From Guillardia theta CCMP2712 (taxonomy: Eukaryota; Protista; Cryptophyta): DNA of 64,000 bases. Each line of letters begins with the position of its first letter. The stretch's first letter is position 1. Under the pieces are notes generated by a model, which was given only the letters and a program-made list of their open reading frames with translations, did no database searches and was not told where the DNA came from. The DNA is taken from NCBI RefSeq assembly GCF_000315625.1, contig NW_005434527.1, positions 37,941 to 101,940 on the forward strand, read 5' to 3'. The position numbers and the translations under genes were made by a program. Below, piece after piece: positions 6,271-15,200 of the stretch.

Positions 6271-7694
6271 ATGAACTTCCCTCTTGTTTCCTTTGTCTTT
6301 CTCTGCTCTCTTATTCAAACGAAATCCGTCTCTTCGCGGCATGTGCAAGATGTAATTCGAGCCATATCTCCGCCGGGCGTAGGACCACGAAGCGAGGAAT
6401 TTGGTCCTAGGCGTGCGCTGGGAAGCACGGACATAGATGGGAGAGGCGTACAGCATACTGTGTCTGTCTGTGGCCCTTTCATGTTCTTGGAAGACGCATT
6501 GCTTCCACGAGGTTTTGCTTCCCTTCAGTACTTTTCAGGCTATTGAGAACATTTCAGGAAAAATGCCGCCTCTGGGCAAGCATCCGCATGCTGGGCTATG
6601 TACTGCCACGATCTTGCTGCGAGGAGACTCCATCAAACACTGGGATAACATAAGGGACATAGAGGAAACGGCAAAAAGCGGGGGCGTTTTGTGCCTGCAC
6701 AGTGCCGGAGGCATCGTACATTCTGAGGAAGCTCATGATGAGGACAAGGATGAGAGCAGCTTCACGCACATTTTGTACGTGTGGTTCGATCCAGGTAAAT
6801 GAATGCCGTGTTTAAAATCCAGATTCATCGATTATTCCAGGAATTCATAGAAGTCAATTGATGTTTCCAAGAATTGAAATATTTGAGCCCTGTCAGTTGC
6901 CAATGGTATTTCCCCTTCTCTTTCCCTTTCCCCACACCCTGTTGATGTCTGAATTGGACTAAACAGATACAAGAAAGAGACATGCGCATACGCTTGTTCA
7001 TGGGTTCTTACATGGGTCGGACTTCCCCAGTCTCTACGTACGACGCTGAGTAAGAACTCTTTGATCCTCATTCGCGTGAGTGACCTCTACTAGCATACTA
7101 GTACTCGACTGTCACTTGCCACCCGGGGAAGAGGAGCATGTCATTTTGATCCCCTCGCGCATGGATGCGGCTATCGTCTTCATTCCGAGGTTCGGAGGGT
7201 CAGGCTATTTCGGTGGCTCGAGGACGCCAATATCAGAGCTGGAAACAGGAATGCTTTCAGCCACTGGCAACTTCATGTCAGTTAGGAGCGCTTCCAGTCT
7301 CAGTTTGCATTTTTTCCTCCTTGCTGGCAAGAGTTTCTCCCTAGAGGAGCGAACTTTCCTTTTGACAGGCCACAGCGGGGCGGTAAGTGGTCATGCTCGG
7401 CACCCGCAGCGATTGACCCCAATGCCGACAGGTGCTTGCTACCAGTGAGGAGAAAGCGAGGAGTTTGATGGAAGACTTCGAGAGAGACCCAGATAACTTT
7501 GGAAACTTTTTTGATGTATTGCATCCTTGCGCTTCTTCTTCTCTAACCTCAAGCAGGAGGAGGCTTGGCACAAAAAGAACGAGGAGCTGGACATGTCCTA
7601 CCCTGAAGAATCGTCACCACCTTCTCTTACCGATATCCCTGACTTTCCAGACCCCGGAGGAAGGCTCAATGTCACATACGATGATTCAGAATGA
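6271..7694 (+). CDS. pirin-family bicupin protein, multi-exon, possible signal peptide
   Basis: GPFMFLED, HPHAG..., GIVHSEE (metal ligands H,H,H,E), IRLFMGSYMGRTSPV, Pirin_C-like FFLLAGK...VLATSEEKARSLMEDF; last exon inferred. Confidence 0.8.
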
Positions 7695-7820
7695 AAGGTG
7701 GAAGGAAGGAGAGAAGAGTCATGGCATTCCAGTTTCATAACATACCATTCCAATCATTTACCTCATCTCCAACCTGTACATTCTTATTTTACAGTAGCTA
7801 GCCAGATGCTTGGCATCTTA

Positions 7821-10800
7821 TCAGGCGGTTTGTTTGAGAGCCCCCCGTCCTTGTGGCCTGCTAACATCTACAATATGCTCTAAGGATTCACCTCTGTCTT
7901 TCAAATATTGCTGCAACCTGAGTCAGCAGGTAGTGGTCGTATAGAGTCATTCACCTCCAGTTTCGCGATCCCTCGCAGCTGAACTTCTCGATCGGGAGGA
8001 ATGTAAAATTTCTCCACGCATGTGCCTCCTCTTCTCGAGATCTCTGTAACTTGCCACCCCAATCTTTCCAGCGAATCATCAAGAACCTAGGGTTGAGTCA
8101 AGCTGCAAACAGTTCCAGATGAGATCTCACCCTGTTTGGTGCAGAGCAGGTTCTCTTGACATGCCCCGAGCCCCCACAATTATTGCAGAGGTATTTGTTC
8201 TGGACCTTGTAGTACTTGCCTCTGACTCCTTCTCGCCGACACCATTCTCCCTTGGTTCGGTTCTCTGGAGCTTGTTTGACTTTGACCGGCTTGGCATGTT
8301 TTCTTTTCTTTTCTTTTTCTCCAGTCTTCTCCTGCTGAGCACTTCACCCCCACTTGAAGCCTGACCATGCCGGAAGGACCGAGAAGTTTTCTTCTTCTTT
8401 TTCTTTTCGAGTTTGCGTTCTTCTTCCTGGTCAATGACGTCGCTTGCTTGTGAGGTGCAATCGGAAAGCGAGCTGCCTTGCCGCTCTTCTTTCGACAACG
8501 CTGAGTTTGCTTGCGCATGTTCCGCGCTCTTCCAACCTGCGTCTGCAAATGCGTCGGTCACCACGGAAGGGAGCGAGCTTCCCATCAGTTCTTCCGCAGC
8601 CGAAGTTCCTTCGCTCTCGTAGACCGCGCGGACCATCTCGGCTCTGAATTGCTCCAATCTTGAAAGCCCTGGCTGCTTGGGATCCACCTTACGTGGATGG
8701 CAGCTCAAGCTCCGCAGTCGACTAGGCCTCTCGACAACATCTTCGCCGGCATGGTTGGACTTATATTTTGTTGACTGCCCGGAAAATGACTGCACTGCCT
8801 GAGACTTTCTCACCCTCGAGACGGAACTTGAGGGCGTCATGTCGTCACTCTCAAGTTGCAAGTTGTCATTCGTCATCTTCCATTCATCCTCACTCTCCCA
8901 TGTCGATGTTTCCTTCTCCAAAGATGACAAATCTTCGCGAGTCTCTCTGCGCGTGGGCTTGACAGTCAGTCCGAGCTCTTCCAATGCTTTCTTGTTCTGC
9001 TCGATTCTTCGAAATCTGTCTTGCTCATAATTGCATGCTGCTTCTGAATCGCGCTTGTCTGCTTGGTCGTGATCCTGTTCCATCTCGTCGTTACTTACAG
9101 GACTCTTATTGACATTTACTTGAGATTCATTCCCGACCACCTCAGCTTTTCTCGGAGAATTCACGCACATGACCTTGCAAGTGAGTAGAGCGGCCAAGAG
9201 AAAGTTGTTGATAGACATTTGCTGCTGCAATTTGTCCTGTAAGATAGAACAATCATTGCAACGCTTGACAGGTAGGGTTGTCACATTCCGCGAAAAGACA
9301 ACTTTAGCGAACTCATTGTCAAGTAGAAAACGATCGCAAGCTTGGAGAAGAGACTCCACTGAAATAGGTTTGACGACTGAATCAAAATTCGCTTGTTTAA
9401 ATTCATCACATGTGGAACTTGCATTCAAGATAGTTGGCTCATTATTCTTCAAATTTTGTTTTGTGGCATCCAGAGAAGGAGTATTATTTTGTTCTGCTGC
9501 TATATCATCAAGCGTCTTGGTATCCATATCTCTCTGGCTTTTGGTCATTTCGGAATTGCGCTGTGTGACTTTCTGATCCTTTAAGTGGTGATCAGAGCAA
9601 TGAGAATCTTGTGCGCGAAGTACTGGACCAAGACTTTTATCGTCTTCGCTTTCAACGACCATCTTCTGAGTATCAGTCTCCCAGTCAATCATCATACCCT
9701 TCAGCTCAGGCGTCGGAACTTGAGATTTCAAGGTCTCCCTGTTGCAATGCGTTTCAAACTGGAAGCTCTTCGCTTCTCGGCTAACGGAAGAGCTCAAGGC
9801 TGTTGAACTGTTTACTCTCTTCTGCTCACACCGTTCGACGCTTGATACATCATTGCAGCCAACCATGCTCTCGTCGTTATCTGACTCGCTGCTAAAAACA
9901 TAGTCCATGTCGTCAAAGCTGATTTTGCGACTGTGATCAAGTGGTGGTTCAGATCGAAACGACTTCTCGGAGGGAGCTGAGCAAGGACGATTCAACTTTC
10001 CTTTCTGGGAGCTTTGGAGGTCCTTCTTGGGTTCCAGCGATTCTCTTATCTTCCTTACCGGCGTCTTGAGAAACCTGAACGTGGGAGTGAGCATCCATTT
10101 CTCAAATTCTGACTGATCTTGAGGCTTGTCAACTGGAACCCTTCTGGGAGGACTTGTCAGGAAGCTCGTGTGAGGCGTGTCTGTGTTCAAACAAGCGTTT
10201 TCCGGAAGGCTGTTGGCTGTTGCGCTCTCTTCACCTGCAGAGGATGAATCCTTCTGCAAAAACCTTCTGCGGAACGAATGGAAATCGTGATCTTCAGGCC
10301 TTGATTTTTGATTTTTGTTGAAATCTTCCAACTTCAATGTCTTGAGGAGATGATTCCTCATATTTGCCGAAGTCTGTTTCACAATCTCCCGCGCATGTTC
10401 GGGGAATTTTTCAGCGACCTGAGAGACAGCTTGTTTCCCGCAACTGCGCACAGCAACTGAAGGATCATTCAAGGCCTTGACGACCAGACGAGAGATATTC
10501 TCAATGTGAGCAGTCAGCTCCTTGTCACTTCGATTTCTAAGCGTTTGGATAAGGACACTCGCGCAGCAATGCCTTACAACCCCGTGAGATGAGACAAACC
10601 TCCTTTGAGTCTTTTTACCTGAGAGGGAGATGCAAATCTTGAAACCCCCGATCCAGTTCGATCAAGACATTGGCAAGGTTCAAGTAATCAGCTATGGAAT
10701 GAATACAATCCCATGAAGCCGAGGAGATCACTTTGACCTTCAAAACTTGAGCTTAGACAAGACAGTAGATTTGAGTTGTGCACAAGAACTCACTGTCACG

Positions 10801-12011
10801 TATGTCAGTTGGAGCAAACTTGATAGGAGAACAGATGGATATGAGTCAAAAGCTTTTCCTATATTTTGAATACAAGCAGTGATTGTACCTTTTCATCGTG
10901 ATCAGAACGAACCAAAGAGAAACAGACACAGAATCGACTTACCACAGGTTTCTTTGACCAGACTAGACCTCTTGTCTAGCAATTGTTCACATATCATCGG
11001 GACGAACTTGCAGAACAAGTTCACAGGAGTGTGTTGAACACTGTATCACGGGTCACACCAACTATTTTGCTTGCTCACGGGATATTTGACCTCACACCGC
11101 CGGGAAGCTGCCCTGTTTCAATCTCTTTGAGCACTTTCGGAATTTCTTGTATTGCCTTCACTCTCTGCGAAACTCCTGAATCAAAAACGAATTTCCTCGC
11201 CAAATACAAACCATAGCCCAGTCAACATTTCGCTCAGCTAACGAAGTTTCAATGTTCTGCACCCTTGACTCCCACAACTGAACACCCTGCAACCAATCAA
11301 GGTCGATTCGAACTGGAAAATGGAGAGCACATTCAAGGCATTCGTATCCTCTTTGGTTGACTCCGAGAACTTGGCTGCTGCACAGAAATCAGTATTGTAG
11401 TGTTTGAAAATGCGAAGAGACCTCTGATTAACGGTTGTTTCTGTGTTGCCTTAGCACTGCTTTTCAGTATCCTTACCGATTCCGACGATCTGGAAGCACT
11501 CAGAATACATACATGCATGGGGAGGGAGGGAGGGAGGGAGGGAGGGAGGGAGGGAGGGAGGGAGGGAGGGAGGGAGAGGATGGGAGAGGGCGAGGGTGAA
11601 CGAGGGCGAGCGGGATTACCCTTTCAAAACGTTGTCTTGTTTAAGAAAGCCGGTCTGATGTTGCAAGACCTGAGCGTCGGCACCTTTGAGCTCTTCAGTC
11701 TCGTCATCCTCAAGGAACTTGCAGGTCTTTTGAAGGAGAAAGGGAGGTGTTTCCGATCCTCCTCTCAGAGTGCTGCAGCCAAACCCTTGAGGCTTGAGAC
11801 GCGAGACGGCATTCGCTGATACTAGCTGCGCATCTACTGAACTGAAAACTCTTGCGTCCTCAATTAGCTTAGCGATGTCCCACTTGCACGGGCATGACGT
11901 GGAGGGATGGCTCGACACAAAGGAGCTTCGCATGGGAGAGTAGAGTGGATCGACAGGGAGGAGCATAACGACGACACAGATCAAGACCTGGACGAGTCCT
12001 GCGCTCTTCAT
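7821..12011 (-). CDS. CLASP_N/TOG-domain protein with signal peptide + LRGG leader, long disordered middle and C-terminal chromodomain-like region
   Basis: All exons join in frame by GT-AG introns: MKSAGLVQVLICVVVMLLP...TLRGG...; DWAMRVKAIQ...LLDKRSSLVKETCGTITACIQNIGKAF...VKVISSASWDCI...ALNDPSVAVRSCGK (CLASP_N HEAT pattern); YEQDRFRRIEQNKKALEELGL; GFLMIRWKDW...NFTFLPIEKF. Confidence 0.75.
11520..11576. repeat. (GGGA)n microsatellite in first intron of TOG gene
   Basis: gggagggaggga run. Confidence 0.9.
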
Positions 12012-12279
12012 CACAGGGATCTCAGTGGATCAATGCACGAGGGACCCCTTCGCCTCCGCTTGACGGGGGCCTCTCGTTCATCTTTATGTGCATGTCTTCA
12101 TCCTCCAGTGCGTCGAGTCTTCCGCTAGTTGTCACGCACATGCTGACTAGCAGGAGCATCTCCCATCCTCCCATCCTCCCTCACTCACGCATGGAAGGGC
12201 TTTTCCCCGCCATATTTCCTTTTAAATTTTGAAATCCAACCCAAATTTCGATCAGCGAATGCAGCTCTGAGGCGCAGGA

Positions 12280-15200
12280 ATGCGCTCCATGCGACGCCTG
12301 TGGGTGTGGCGGATGCTCATGGCGGCGGTGGCAGGGAGCGTGGCAGGAGGAGACATGGCGCAGGGAAGGCGGCTCCTGGTTCTATACGGTTCTCAGACAG
12401 GAACAGCAGAAGAGATGGCTGTTCATGGGTCATCCAGGCTTGCGCTTGCTGGTGCAGCTCCAATATGCAAGAGCTTGAGTGAATGCTCGCTTCAAAGTTT
12501 GCAGCAGGCAGAAGCTGCTGTCTTTGTCGTGTCAACTACCGGAGATGGTGAGGCTCCGTTGACCATGAGACGGTTTTGGATGACCTTGCGAAAGCGGGAC
12601 CTTGACCAAGCGTGCCTTGCAAATCTCAGTTATGCTGTGTACGGTTGTGGAGATTCCTCATACCCCAAGTTTAACGCGGTAGCCAGAAGACTTGATATTC
12701 GCCTCCAAGCTCTGGGTGCCAAGCGATTGTGTGATGTAGTGTTGGGTGATGAGCAATCCCCCTTGGGTGTCGCGCAAGGTCATGGCATGTGCTGTTCTCA
12801 AATTTGTTTTGAAACTTTTCTTAACAGGACTATCTGAATGGACGGATCGAATCGCTTCGAAGCTGAAGCTCCTCCATTCTGATCATATGGACAAATACCT
12901 GCACACTCATCAGGCTATGAAATATTTTCTTGGCAGCAGAGATGGAGCATCTGTAAAGCGCAAACCCATGGATTTTTCAGATTATGTGAGTAATTCATGG
13001 ATGAAGTATAAGTTTTGAAATAGGCACAGGAAGAAACTGTCCATTCGCTTTCTTTGTGCTCACAAATCGTTCTCTTTGCCAATGGCAACCCACTCTCCAA
13101 ACAAATGTGCAGTGGAACAAAGAACGGTGAAATTTCTGTCCGCTTGCGTTGACGGTCTGAGCAAGTTCCAGCATTTTCTTTGCTGCGACTGGCAGGATTG
13201 AGTTTTTCCTATTTTGATACGTCTCTCGATCAGGAGATCAGAGAGAGTTTGACCAGACGCTTTCAAGTGAATCCGCCGTTTGTGTGCGGAAATGGATCTA
13301 TCCTTGTCAGCAGAGACGAGCTGAGAGCATTGGAAGAGAACATAACACTTGGAGAGCTATCCTTACAGAGGTTGATGTGCTTCCAAGAACCAGGAGATAG
13401 ATATGAGAGGTCACTGAATGATGACCTGAGGGCTGGAGATTGTGGAGAGAACAGAACTCAACACATGTGGGACTCTGAATCGATTTCGAACCATATACCA
13501 GGCATCAGAGAATCTATCTTGAAAGGTCTTTTGAAAGGAATTTTACACTACATCTGATGCTCTTTGATTCTTTTCCCGGCTTCCAGCGACTGTCAAATTT
13601 GTCAGCACGCTTACAAAAGGAAGGGATTTCGATGTCAACGACGTTAGACACGTTGAACTGAAACTCCCAAATGGTCCGTTCGATCAGTGCCAGATCTTAT
13701 TCTAACAACAATGGAAGAATACAGGTACAAAGCTGGAAATGTTGCGCTTATCATGCCAAGGAATCGGCCATGTTGCACTGAACGCTTCTTACGTTTGCTC
13801 CGCCTGAATGGTGTCTGAAGGCTCACGCGAATTGGATGCTGAACTTGCAGCAGGCAACACAATCATTGATAGCATCAATGTATCCAACTCTTCCTTTGAT
13901 TTCTTGCTCAACCGCTTGAATTTCCGTCTTCCTTGTACAGTGCGAGAAATCGTTTCTTCACAGCTTGTAGCCTTTATCTCCTTTGTTCACAAGCACTAAG
14001 TTCCTGAAGGATCTTGAGGGGCGGCCGCAGCCCTATCTCCTGCATCTACTGTCCTATTTTGCTGATGACGCCGAAGAGGCCGAAAGACTCGCTTACTTTG
14101 CTAGCACGGTCAGCCAACACCTTGTGTTATCTTCAAGATTCTAATGTGAAGCAGGAAGGCGTGGAAGACAGAATCGAATACTGTGAAAAGACGAAAAGGA
14201 CTATCCTCAATGTTCTTGAAGATTTCCCTTCTCTCTGTAAAGCGGGTACTTCCTTAAGATTTCCCCATGGGACTGCCATAGTGCTGCCATAACGGTACGT
14301 CAGATTTCAGTCATCTTCTTGCAATACTTCCCCGGCTTCAACCGCGAGCGTATTCGATTGCATCTTCGCCATTAGCTCACAGGCAAGCACAGCATTTTTT
14401 GAGATCTCACTCATTGTTTTGTTAATCAGTCAAGAGCTACATTTCTGTATTGTTGTTGTCGAGTATCGATCACCTCTTGGACGGAGTCTGAAGAAGGGTG
14501 TGTGCTCAAGCTACGTGTCTGGTCTGGTACATGTAGTCACATACATTCACTGACAGATGATCTGATCCCATCTTGTCAGGAGCGATTTGACTGTCTCCCT
14601 GCTGCCATCTTTCCTGATTTTGGTTGCGGCCTGGCGTTCAATTTCTTCAAACCAGCAATTGTGATTGCTGCTGGATCTGGGATCGCACCGTGAGTCTGCA
14701 GCAGAGGAAGCATTCAGAGGAGACTTGAATGTTGACACAAGCCTGTTGACAGCTTCAGGGGAATCTTGTGGGAGCGGAAGATGATGAAAGAACAGAGCCT
14801 TCCCGTTTGCTCTGTGCTCGCCATTGTTGGCTTTCGCTACAGGTGAATGCTTTTTTAGGATCGAGCCACTGATGCATTGCCTTGCAGAAAGGCAGATTAC
14901 ATGTACGAAAAAGATTGGGAAGAGCTCTTCAGCAATGACCATGATGCCGTGCTGAAGCTTGCGTATACTGTTTCCCAGCCGCGGAAGTTTACTAATATAT
15001 TTCACAGATTCTCTCGCGACGGGAAGCAAAAGGAGTATGTCCAACACAAGATTGCTCTGTTCTCAGATGAAATCTGGGACGCTCTGACGTCGTTTCTCGA
15101 TTTTGTCAGCCTTGAGCTCAGATCATCGCAGGCGGGGAGCTGTTATTTACGTCGCAGGATCTGCTGGGGCTATGCCAAGAGCTGTCGAGGAAGCTTTCAT

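What the first reader, a model, noticed from the sequence alone, without database searches (positions are those of the whole stretch)
7821..12011. TOG (CLASP_N) + chromodomain-like protein with signal peptide and LRGG leader: candidate periplastid/nucleomorph segregation factor
Seen: the exon at 11619-12011 (hydrophobic MKSAGLVQVLICVVVMLLP, Ser-rich stretch, LRGG at 11757-11768) splices in frame by canonical GT-AG introns into a CLASP_N-type HEAT domain, then a long disordered region with a YEQDRFRRIEQNKKALEELGL helix, then IIVGARG...GFLMIRWKDW...NFTFLPIEKF..LQQYL, which resembles a chromodomain. Established: TOG/CLASP domains bind tubulin, chromodomains read chromatin, neither works in the secretory lumen; in cryptophytes signal+transit leaders without +1 Phe direct proteins to the periplastidal compartment, and the nucleomorph encodes tubulins although its division machinery is poorly understood. 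Inference: a host-encoded microtubule-chromatin linker imported into the endosymbiont cytosol.
Basis: partly seen in the sequence, partly recalled or inferred. Interest (0 to 1): 0.82.

Follow-up and report, generated by a model that had tools for sequence, protein, structure and literature searches.

The report
Periplastid-type leader on TOG protein
This Guillardia theta nuclear gene makes one spliced mRNA for a tubulin-binding (TOG) protein that carries the same kind of import leader as proteins proven to enter the relict endosymbiont cytoplasm, but its supposed chromodomain is a reading-frame artefact of a one-base assembly error; the real tail is a zinc knuckle plus a small unclassified domain.

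Summary
The window is Guillardia theta. The gene is GUITHDRAFT_119449, annotated "TOG domain-containing", on the minus strand.

Confirmed:
- A spliced transcriptome contig joins the leader exon (ATG at 12011) through eight GT-AG introns to a CLASP_N/TOG domain and the 2.4-kb exon.
- A second contig splices the last two introns.

Not confirmed: the "chromodomain".
- Contigs from three runs each carry one base more than the window within 8129-8411.
- Hanusia phi and metagenomic relatives continue in the shifted frame.
- The true 1210-aa protein ends in a basic stretch, a CCHC zinc knuckle and a small helix/hairpin/helix domain. Its MBD signal is below threshold and it has no fold match.

The targeting idea is strengthened.
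- All nine family lineages with readable N-termini show a hydrophobic signal-like start, a variable spacer and an invariant (L)RGG.
- All six G. theta presequences localised to the periplastid compartment by GFP fusion also carry (L)RGG at the leader boundary.
- Other follow-ups in this scan had noted the LRGG mark on other DNA of this genome. I tested it here.

A role in tubulin handling or nucleomorph segregation remains inference. The taxon of the relatives is unresolved.

The parts
12012..12209 (-). 5' UTR as far as the transcript contig reaches; contains upstream ATGs, including a 50-aa uORF (12174-12022)
   Evidence: X1 contig reaches 12209; ORF list; sequence
11952..12011 (-). Start codon and hydrophobic signal-peptide-like segment (residues 1-20)
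   Evidence: Kyte-Doolittle 12-residue mean 3.3; conserved in Hanusia (VMLLPVDP); equivalent segments in all family lineages
11769..11951 (-). Variable spacer between the hydrophobic segment and LRGG (transit-peptide-like, about 61 aa)
   Evidence: Poorly conserved and net positive across the family
11757..11768 (-). LRGG (residues 82-85), proposed end of the import leader
   Evidence: R83, G84 and G85 invariant in alignment A1; same motif at the leader boundary of six GFP-localised G. theta PPC proteins
11688..11750 (-). Conserved TPP...DDETEEL motif at the start of the presumed mature protein (residues 88-108)
   Evidence: T88, P90 and D103-L108 invariant in A1
10350..11268 (-). CLASP_N-type TOG domain (residues 176-397), split over exons 4-9
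   Evidence: Pfam PF12348 E 6.7e-20, 72.1 bits against cut-off 27; best solved relatives are CLASP1 and CLASP2 TOG2, 4k92 and 3woy; exon joints
8131..10572 (-). Exon 9: end of the TOG domain, long low-complexity region with conserved islands, basic region and CCHC knuckle
   Evidence: Continuous in X1 and X2 contigs; islands conserved with Hanusia
8967..9032 (-). NYEQDRFRRIEQNKKALEELGL motif (residues 837-858)
   Evidence: Conserved in P0002, P0003, P0005 and P0010
8532..8717 (-). Most conserved module of the family, LRSLSCHPRKVDP...FRAEMVRAVYESEGTSAAEELMGSSLPSVV...GW (residues 942-1003); no known family
   Evidence: 60-82% identity across lineages; no Pfam or PDB match
8299..8326 (-). A-rich run where the window most likely lacks one base (frame 2 to frame 1)
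   Evidence: One extra letter in contigs of X1, X2 and X9, overlap 8129-8411; Hanusia alignment breaks at RRRLE; frames
8146..8250 (-). GEWCRREGV.GKYY hairpin and CCHC zinc knuckle CNNCGGSGHVKRTC
   Evidence: zf-CCHC 20.1 bits against cut-off 20.8; family profile hits retroviral nucleocapsid knuckles at E 1.3e-4; conserved in P0002, P0003, P0010, P0013 and P0269
7955..8086 (-). Exon 10: first part of the C-terminal small domain (VLDDSLERLGWQV...EKFYIPPDREVQLRGIAKLE)
   Evidence: Spliced in the X2 contig; same sequence pattern in P0010, P0269 and L002; AF2 model pLDDT 87.8
7821..7910 (-). Exon 11: end of the domain and stop codon (7823-7821)
   Evidence: Joint 7955/7910 in the X2 contig; translation

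Best explanation
GUITHDRAFT_119449 is a nucleus-encoded protein of 1210 aa.

Proposed route and action:
- It enters the ER through an N-terminal signal peptide.
- It is then passed into the periplastid compartment (PPC), the relict red-algal cytoplasm, by a transit-peptide-like spacer that ends in LRGG.
- The mature protein would begin at about SETPP.
- Its single CLASP-type TOG domain would bind alpha/beta-tubulin, which in this compartment is supplied by the nucleomorph genome.
- Its lysine/arginine-rich stretch, CCHC zinc knuckle and small C-terminal domain would bind nucleic acid, possibly after entry into the nucleomorph.

Shown: the transcript structure, the domain content, the frame correction, and the leader pattern with its match to localised PPC proteins.

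Inferred: the localisation itself, tubulin binding, nucleic-acid binding, and any role in nucleomorph division.
For: Transcript:
- One spliced transcript runs from 12209 to the stop.

Leader:
- The hydrophobic start is conserved with Hanusia.
- It is present in all nine family lineages with readable N-termini. Most have positively charged n-regions, followed by a variable, net-positive spacer and an invariant (L)RGG.
- In ASAFind 2.0 Appendix S3 (PMC12136025), all six G. theta presequences localised to the PPC by GFP fusion carry (L)RGG at the leader/mature boundary. These are ugg-t, EF-1alpha, 14-3-3, RRM1, CyP and Ubc8.
- In EF-1alpha the motif lies directly before the conserved GKEK start.

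TOG domain:
- CLASP_N at 72 bits.
- Aligns to CLASP1 TOG2 with the DW..R motif and the loop K/R residues kept.

C-terminal module:
- The CCHC knuckle and C-terminal domain are conserved across the family.
- Residues 1001-1100 hold 27 K+R.

Substrate:
[quoted passage not shown] 1999, as listed in PMC1523203).
- Its alpha-tubulin mRNA is expressed (PMC5443833).
Against: - No localisation data exist for this protein.
- No signal-peptide or cleavage-site predictor was available. Leu or Tyr follows the hydrophobic segment, and Phe31 lies a little further on, so a plastid-type +1 residue cannot be excluded.
- The 5' UTR carries several upstream ATGs.
- The spacer contains conserved patches (CPCK..IAKL), unlike a typical transit peptide.
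- Relatives with the same architecture come from unidentified marine algae with red complex plastids. If these lack nucleomorphs, a tubulin or chromatin role in the PPC would not explain the family. Diatom PPCs have no tubulin (PMC3101018).
- The C-terminal domain matches no solved DNA-binding fold.
Confidence: 0.55

Rival explanations
1. The protein enters the secretory pathway and stays there: in the lumen of the ER, nuclear envelope or chloroplast ER, anchored by an uncleaved N-terminal signal anchor, or secreted. It never crosses the periplastid membrane.
For: The hydrophobic N-terminus is unusually well conserved between Guillardia and Hanusia (VMLLPVDP). No canonical small-x-small cleavage site lies close to it in G. 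theta, which fits a signal anchor.
Against: TOG, CCHC and basic NLS-like regions are cytosolic or nuclear modules with no known lumenal role. The SP + spacer + LRGG pattern matches six localised PPC proteins.
Confidence: 0.12
2. The leader is a full plastid-targeting signal and the protein goes on to the stroma, where the nucleic-acid-binding end would meet plastid DNA or RNA.
For: Leu23/Tyr24 and Phe31 in G. theta, Phe26 in Hanusia and Phe38 in P0003 follow the hydrophobic segment. With a late cleavage site, one of these could sit at +1.
Against: Other lineages (P0005, P0011, P0004) have no aromatic residue in a plausible +1 position. LRGG-ended leaders belong to PPC proteins in the published set. 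There is no tubulin in the stroma.
Confidence: 0.1
3. The protein works in the host cytosol or nucleus as an unusual single-TOG microtubule regulator. The hydrophobic start is not used as a signal, for example because translation begins downstream or upstream ORFs redirect ribosomes.
For: Upstream ATGs and a 50-aa uORF lie in the 5' UTR. Met27 is in frame. The domains are typical of cytosolic or nuclear proteins.
Against: The hydrophobic start is conserved in nine lineages, and the open reading frame is kept from the same Met in Hanusia. That would not be expected of untranslated sequence.
Confidence: 0.12
4. One reading: the C-terminus is a chromodomain that reads histone marks, making the protein a microtubule-chromatin linker.
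Against: The quoted residues are an out-of-frame translation. In the right frame there is no chromo hit in Pfam or by fold.
Confidence: 0.01

Closest known systems
CLASP (CLIP-associating protein) TOG2 domain, e.g. human CLASP1 4k92 and CLASP2 3woy
   Same: Full-length match to Pfam CLASP_N. The best solved sequence relatives are these two. The HEAT-loop DW..R motif and the basic residues are aligned.
   Different: There is only one TOG domain. There is no TOG array, no SxIP or Ser-rich lattice-binding region that I recognised, and no CLIP-binding C-terminal domain. Identity is only ~25%. The protein also carries a secretory-type leader and a zinc-knuckle tail.
Experimentally localised G. theta periplastid proteins (EF-1alpha, 14-3-3, RRM1, CyP, Ubc8, ugg-t; Gould et al. 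2006, as compiled in PMC12136025)
   Same: Signal peptide, variable spacer of 15-60 residues, then (L)RGG at the boundary to the conserved mature part.
   Different: Unrelated mature proteins. The present leader has not been tested. Its spacer (61 aa) is at the long end and holds a few conserved patches.
[quoted passage not shown]
   Same: A host-encoded protein with a bipartite leader, proposed to reach the nucleomorph and act on its chromatin.
   Different: H2A has an obvious nucleomorph substrate. Here nucleic-acid binding and nucleomorph entry are only inferred from basic stretches and a zinc knuckle.
Methyl-CpG-binding domain (MBD, PF01429)
   Same: The G. theta C-terminal 73 aa give MBD as the top Pfam hit, in register (residues 9-52 to profile 13-58). 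The 44-aa exon is nearest to MBD clusters by language-model features (0.84). From my memory of MeCP2, the spacing of W, RK.G, an aromatic residue, and R...L..Y agrees.
   Different: The score is 17 bits, below the 21-bit cut-off. Relatives P0010 and P0269 give no MBD hit. The confident AF2 model (helix, hairpin, long helix) finds no MBD among solved structures.
CEP104 (TOG domain followed by zinc fingers)
   Same: A TOG domain combined with a zinc-binding module. There is a sub-threshold CEP104-like_TOG hit (21 bits against 24.3).
   Different: The zinc module is of a different type. There is no jelly-roll or coiled-coil architecture. CEP104 is centriolar or ciliary and has no leader.

Membership tests
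TOG / CLASP_N (PF12348) | Profile match above the curated cut-off over the whole ~225-residue HEAT array | tested here: met
   72.1 bits against 27, profile positions 3-225 of 227. Also met in P0003, P0004, P0005 and P0007.
TOG / CLASP_N (PF12348) | Tubulin-contacting loop residues (Trp in the first HEAT loop, basic residues in later loops) | tested here: inconclusive
   The alignment to CLASP1 TOG2 keeps DW..R, DxRS, a Lys in 'TVKV' and Arg residues. Which of these contact tubulin rests on my recollection of the CLASP TOG2 literature, not on a tool.
CLASP orthologue | Several TOG domains plus a C-terminal CLIP/partner-binding domain | tested here: not met
   A single CLASP_N stretch in P0001 and P0002, against four in a typical CLASP such as P0008.
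Chromodomain | Chromo profile or fold in the translated C-terminus | tested here: not met
The corrected sequence has no chromo hit.
MBD (PF01429) | Profile match above the cut-off | tested here: not met
   E 0.0047, 17 bits against a 21-bit cut-off for G. theta. No hit for P0010 or P0269.
MBD (PF01429) | MBD fold (beta-sheet wedge plus helix) | tested here: inconclusive
   The AF2 model (pLDDT 87.8) shows a helix, a two-stranded hairpin and a long helix. There is no MBD among Foldseek or VIA hits, best Z 3.9. Small domains are often missed.
zf-CCHC zinc knuckle (PF00098) | C-x2-C-x4-H-x4-C spacing and a profile match | tested here: met
   CNNCGGSGHVKRTC has the spacing. Pfam gives 20.1 bits, just under the 20.8 cut-off. 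The family profile matches retroviral nucleocapsid knuckles at E 1.3e-4. The knuckle is conserved in five lineages.
Cryptophyte periplastid (PPC) bipartite leader | N-terminal signal peptide | tested here: inconclusive
   A hydrophobic 12-mer with mean KD 3.3 follows MKS. Equivalent segments with basic n-regions occur in relatives. No SignalP or TargetP was available.
Cryptophyte periplastid (PPC) bipartite leader | No F/W/Y/L at +1 of the transit-peptide-like part (PMC12136025) | not testable with these tools
   The cleavage site is unknown. Candidate positions give L23, Y24 or, further on, F31.
Cryptophyte periplastid (PPC) bipartite leader | (L)RGG at the end of the leader. This is an empirical mark, not a published criterion. 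| tested here: met
   LRGG at residues 82-85, invariant in the family. It is present in 6 of 6 GFP-localised G. theta PPC presequences.

The most novel reading that the evidence does not exclude
This is the first host-encoded microtubule regulator of the cryptophyte endosymbiont. It would be imported into the periplastid compartment and nucleomorph. There it would load or stabilise nucleomorph-encoded tubulin through its TOG domain while its basic, zinc-knuckle and MBD-like tail holds nucleomorph DNA. That would give the apparently spindle-less nucleomorph a minimal segregation tether under host control.
Probability: 0.18. Interest if true: 0.85.

Novelty: new variant of a known kind. Interest (0 to 1): 0.62.

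Why it matters
[quoted passage not shown] To my knowledge no microtubules or spindle have been described in that compartment, and how the nucleomorph divides is unknown.

A host-encoded TOG protein with a periplastid-type leader is a concrete, testable handle on that question. It can be localised, tested for binding to nucleomorph tubulin, and tested for binding to DNA.

The work also:
- corrects a public gene model, whose last ~100 residues are wrong because of a 1-nt assembly error;
- defines a conserved, unnamed protein family (leader, TOG, FRAEMVRAVYESEGTSAAEELMG module, CCHC, small domain);
- adds an independent case, checked against published localised proteins, for (L)RGG marking the end of periplastid leaders. 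I found no paper that holds both 'LRGG' and 'periplastid'.

Tried and rejected
- **Chromodomain:** rejected as a frame artefact.
- **MBD membership:** could not be established. Pfam is below threshold. Sequence searches against solved structures found nothing for the exon or for the spliced 73 aa. Two AF2 models were searched with Foldseek, VIA-align wide and atlas-by-shape without an MBD, chromo or any clear match.
- **Word-based protein searches:** the family alignment A1 found nothing new. P0005 found only unnamed metagenomic relatives.
- **Naming the organism of the GC-rich relatives:** failed.
  - Cluster look-ups gave only ENA, Logan and JGI records and a mis-binned 'Promethearchaeia' MAG.
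  - Contig records are Tara or other marine metagenomes.
  - The atlas search with the neighbouring KAS gave only broad plant and diatom clusters.
- **Other conserved modules:** the FRAEMVRAVYESEG module, the NYE...LGL motif and the N-terminal region have no Pfam or PDB match.
- **Literature:** the G. theta genome paper (10.1038/nature11681) is not held, so its predicted periplastid proteome could not be checked. No paper mentions GUITHDRAFT_119449.
- **RNA run X13:** it gave only 11 reads at 90-99% identity (9 of them at 95-99%), too few to say anything about strand or level.
Full report
**What the locus is.** A word-based protein search with the large exon returned the window's own product, GUITHDRAFT_119449 of Guillardia theta CCMP2712 (P0001, 1181 aa, "TOG domain-containing"). 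It also returned one named relative, from Hanusia phi (P0002, 1252 aa, 50% identity). The gene lies on the minus strand between a divergent flavodoxin-like gene that starts at 12280 and a convergent plus-strand gene that ends near 7740.

**Transcript structure.** I laid contigs of four public runs on 7400-12400.
- X1 and X2 are cDNA assemblies, because their contigs lack the introns. X9 is unspliced.
- One X1 contig (5308 nt) runs from 12209 through exon 1 (to 11620). It continues through exons 11489-11422, 11377-11331, 11286-11212, 11164-11091, 11040-10943, 10888-10794 and 10737-10619, and from 10572 onwards without a break.
- An X2 contig splices 8131/8086 and 7955/7910. X1 retains those last two introns.
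- All ten introns are GT-AG; nine are 44-56 nt and the first is 130 nt.

The leader exon and the TOG domain belong to one mRNA, and the ATG at 12011 opens the frame after an in-frame stop. The 5' UTR carries several upstream ATGs and a 50-aa uORF.

**The frame error.** The chain of exons adds up to 3629 nt, which is not a multiple of three.
- In one search the aligned pieces of X1 (7557-10571), X2 (8129-9224) and X9 (7843-8411) are each one letter longer than the window. X9 8410-10147 is not. The extra base therefore lies in 8129-8411. The tool dropped the row because it falls in a skipped A-rich repeat (8287-8326).
- The BLASTP alignment of P0001 and P0002 stops at RRRLE (residue 1074). Hanusia continues with KRAKPVKVEKPPENRTRGDWCRREGVGGKYYKVQNKYLCNNCGASGHVKRTC, which is the window's frame 1, not the annotated frame 2.
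- Adding one base in the A-runs at about 8299-8326 gives an open frame of 1210 codons ending at the TGA at 7823-7821.

**True C-terminus.** In the right frame the protein ends with the following parts:
- a K/R-rich stretch (27 K+R in residues 1001-1100);
- GEWCRREGVRGKYYKVQNKYL, followed by a CCHC knuckle CNNCGGSGHVKRTC. Pfam gives 20.1 bits against a 20.8 cut-off, and a family profile matches retroviral nucleocapsid knuckles at E 1.3e-4;
- VLDDSLERLGWQVTEISRRGGTCVEKFYIPPDREVQLRGIAKLE|QYLKDRGESLEHIV...

The same module is found in metagenomic relatives P0010, P0269 and P0013, and across two introns on L002. This independently confirms the frame.

What that last domain is remains open.
- The spliced 73 aa give MBD as the best Pfam hit, but below threshold (E 0.0047, 17 against 21 bits).
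- The 44-aa exon is nearest to MBD clusters by language-model features (0.84, a lead only).
- Relatives give no MBD hit.
- A confident AF2 model (pLDDT 87.8: helix, hairpin, long helix) finds no MBD, chromo or other clear match by Foldseek, VIA-align or atlas shape search.

I therefore describe it as a small conserved domain with a weak MBD-like signature.

**TOG domain.**
- CLASP_N matches residues 176-397 end to end (E 6.7e-20).
- The nearest solved sequences are the TOG2 domains of human CLASP1 and CLASP2.
- There is one TOG domain only and no CLASP C-terminal domain, so this is not a CLASP orthologue.

**The family.** An exhaustive HMMER search of 1.84 billion representatives found 228 hits. 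Most are generic TOG proteins. About a dozen clusters share this protein's particular parts: P0003/P0159, P0004, P0005, P0007, P0009-P0014, P0028, P0030 and P0042. These parts are:
- the leader;
- the TPP...DDETEEL motif;
- the TOG domain;
- a NYE...R.RI..N...L..LG(L/I) motif;
- a strikingly conserved module, HP..VDP...GL.R.EQFRAEMVRAVYESEGTSAAEELMGSSLPS.V...FA..GW (60-82% identity, against 31-45% in the TOG domain), with no Pfam or PDB relative;
- the CCHC and C-terminal domain.

All of these clusters come from marine metagenomes or Logan assemblies and none carries an organism name. On contig L003, a neighbouring KAS gene begins MGKEARKAALAACALAGSAEA|FVMTGF, a bipartite leader with Phe after the predicted cleavage motif. 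That organism therefore has a red-type complex plastid. Whether it is a cryptophyte, haptophyte or ochrophyte I could not determine.

**The leader.**
- Every lineage with a readable N-terminus (nine in all, including P0007 once its upstream in-frame extension on L004 is read) begins with a 12-20-residue hydrophobic run, mostly after a basic n-region.
- A 22-61-residue spacer follows. It is variable, rich in Ala/Pro/Ser/Arg and neutral to positively charged.
- An invariant (L)RGG comes next, and then conserved sequence.

The scan's own notes (s1-437025 and others) claim that LRGG ends periplastid leaders in this genome. I tested that claim against published data in Appendix S3 of ASAFind 2.0 (PMC12136025).
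- All six G. theta presequences localised to the periplastid compartment by GFP fusion carry the motif at the leader/mature boundary: ugg-t SLRGG, EF-1alpha LRLRGG (directly before GKEK), 14-3-3 LRLRGG, RRM1 LRLRGG, CyP LRLRGG, Ubc8 PLRGG.
- Several T. pseudonana members of that PPC set show it too: Der1-1 DLRGG, TrxH SLRGG, sSec14 QIRGG.
- A given tetrapeptide such as LRGG should turn up by chance in only a fraction of a percent of 100-residue stretches (my estimate from typical residue frequencies).
- No paper in the library holds both 'LRGG' and 'periplastid'.

This makes periplastid import the best-supported destination. It is still a prediction. The cleavage site, and hence the +1 residue that separates periplastid from stromal targeting (PMC12136025), could not be computed here.

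**Function.** The steps beyond localisation are inferred.
- The nucleomorph of G. theta encodes alpha-, beta- and gamma-tubulin (Keeling et al. 1999, cited in PMC1523203), and alpha-tubulin mRNA is present throughout the cycle (PMC5443833). A TOG domain in that compartment would have a substrate.
- The basic region, zinc knuckle and C-terminal domain suggest nucleic-acid binding, and the basic clusters could serve as nuclear localisation signals.
- A tubulin-nucleic-acid tether is thus possible, but nothing here shows it.
- In diatoms, no PPC-directed tubulin or other cytoskeletal component was found (PMC3101018). If the unnamed relatives turn out to be nucleomorph-less algae, the family's common function must be something else.

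**Verdict.**
- It is a new variant of a known kind, a single-TOG protein with an endosymbiont-type leader and a zinc-knuckle tail, and a good experimental lead on nucleomorph tubulin.

Noticed in passing
window 8299-8326: The reference assembly appears to lack one A in an A-rich run. As a result, the public protein GUITHDRAFT_119449 has about 100 wrong C-terminal residues and is 29 aa too short.
   Followed up: yes
window 7911-7954 and 8087-8130: The last two 44-nt introns are retained in the X1 transcriptome contig and spliced in X2. The Hanusia phi transcript model also reads through the equivalent intron after the CCHC knuckle. Retention puts a stop 10 codons after ...CSAPNR, which would remove the C-terminal domain.
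   Followed up: partly
window 12022-12174 (minus strand): A 50-aa upstream ORF, plus further upstream ATGs, lies in the 5' UTR of the TOG gene.
   Followed up: no
window 11515-11580 (intron 1): A (CCCT)n microsatellite of about ten units lies inside the 130-nt first intron. The reads tool skipped 11504-11610 as a repeat.
   Followed up: no
window 7431-7740 (plus strand): The convergent plus-strand neighbour has a 41-nt GT-AG intron (7516-7556). Its 3' end lies so close to the TOG gene's stop that the X1 assembler merged both transcripts into one contig.
   Followed up: no
window 12280-12837 (plus strand): The divergent neighbour starts about 270 bp upstream of the TOG gene's ATG and has a flavodoxin-like start (LLVLYGSQTGTAEEMA). 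Its transcript contigs begin near 12299-12302, so the two genes share a short bidirectional promoter region.
   Followed up: no
L003 and clusters of P0159, P0194, P0224, P0239, P0286: Fragments of this alga's nuclear genes (the TOG family member, KAS, a Kelch/BTB protein and others) are deposited at NCBI as proteins of a 'Promethearchaeia archaeon' MAG (MGB16xxxxx). That Asgard bin seems to be contaminated with eukaryotic algal contigs.
   Followed up: partly
PMC12136025 Appendix S3: (L/I)RGG also closes the leaders of several Thalassiosira pseudonana members of the PPC set (Der1-1, TrxH, sSec14; sCdc48-2 has GRGG). The mark is therefore not confined to cryptophytes.
   Followed up: partly
P0002 residues ~175-225 and 282-300: The Hanusia phi protein model contains stretches that look like retained or mis-framed introns within the TOG region, for example a 19-aa insert where G. 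theta has a 54-nt intron. Its TOG match is therefore shorter than in G. theta.
   Followed up: no
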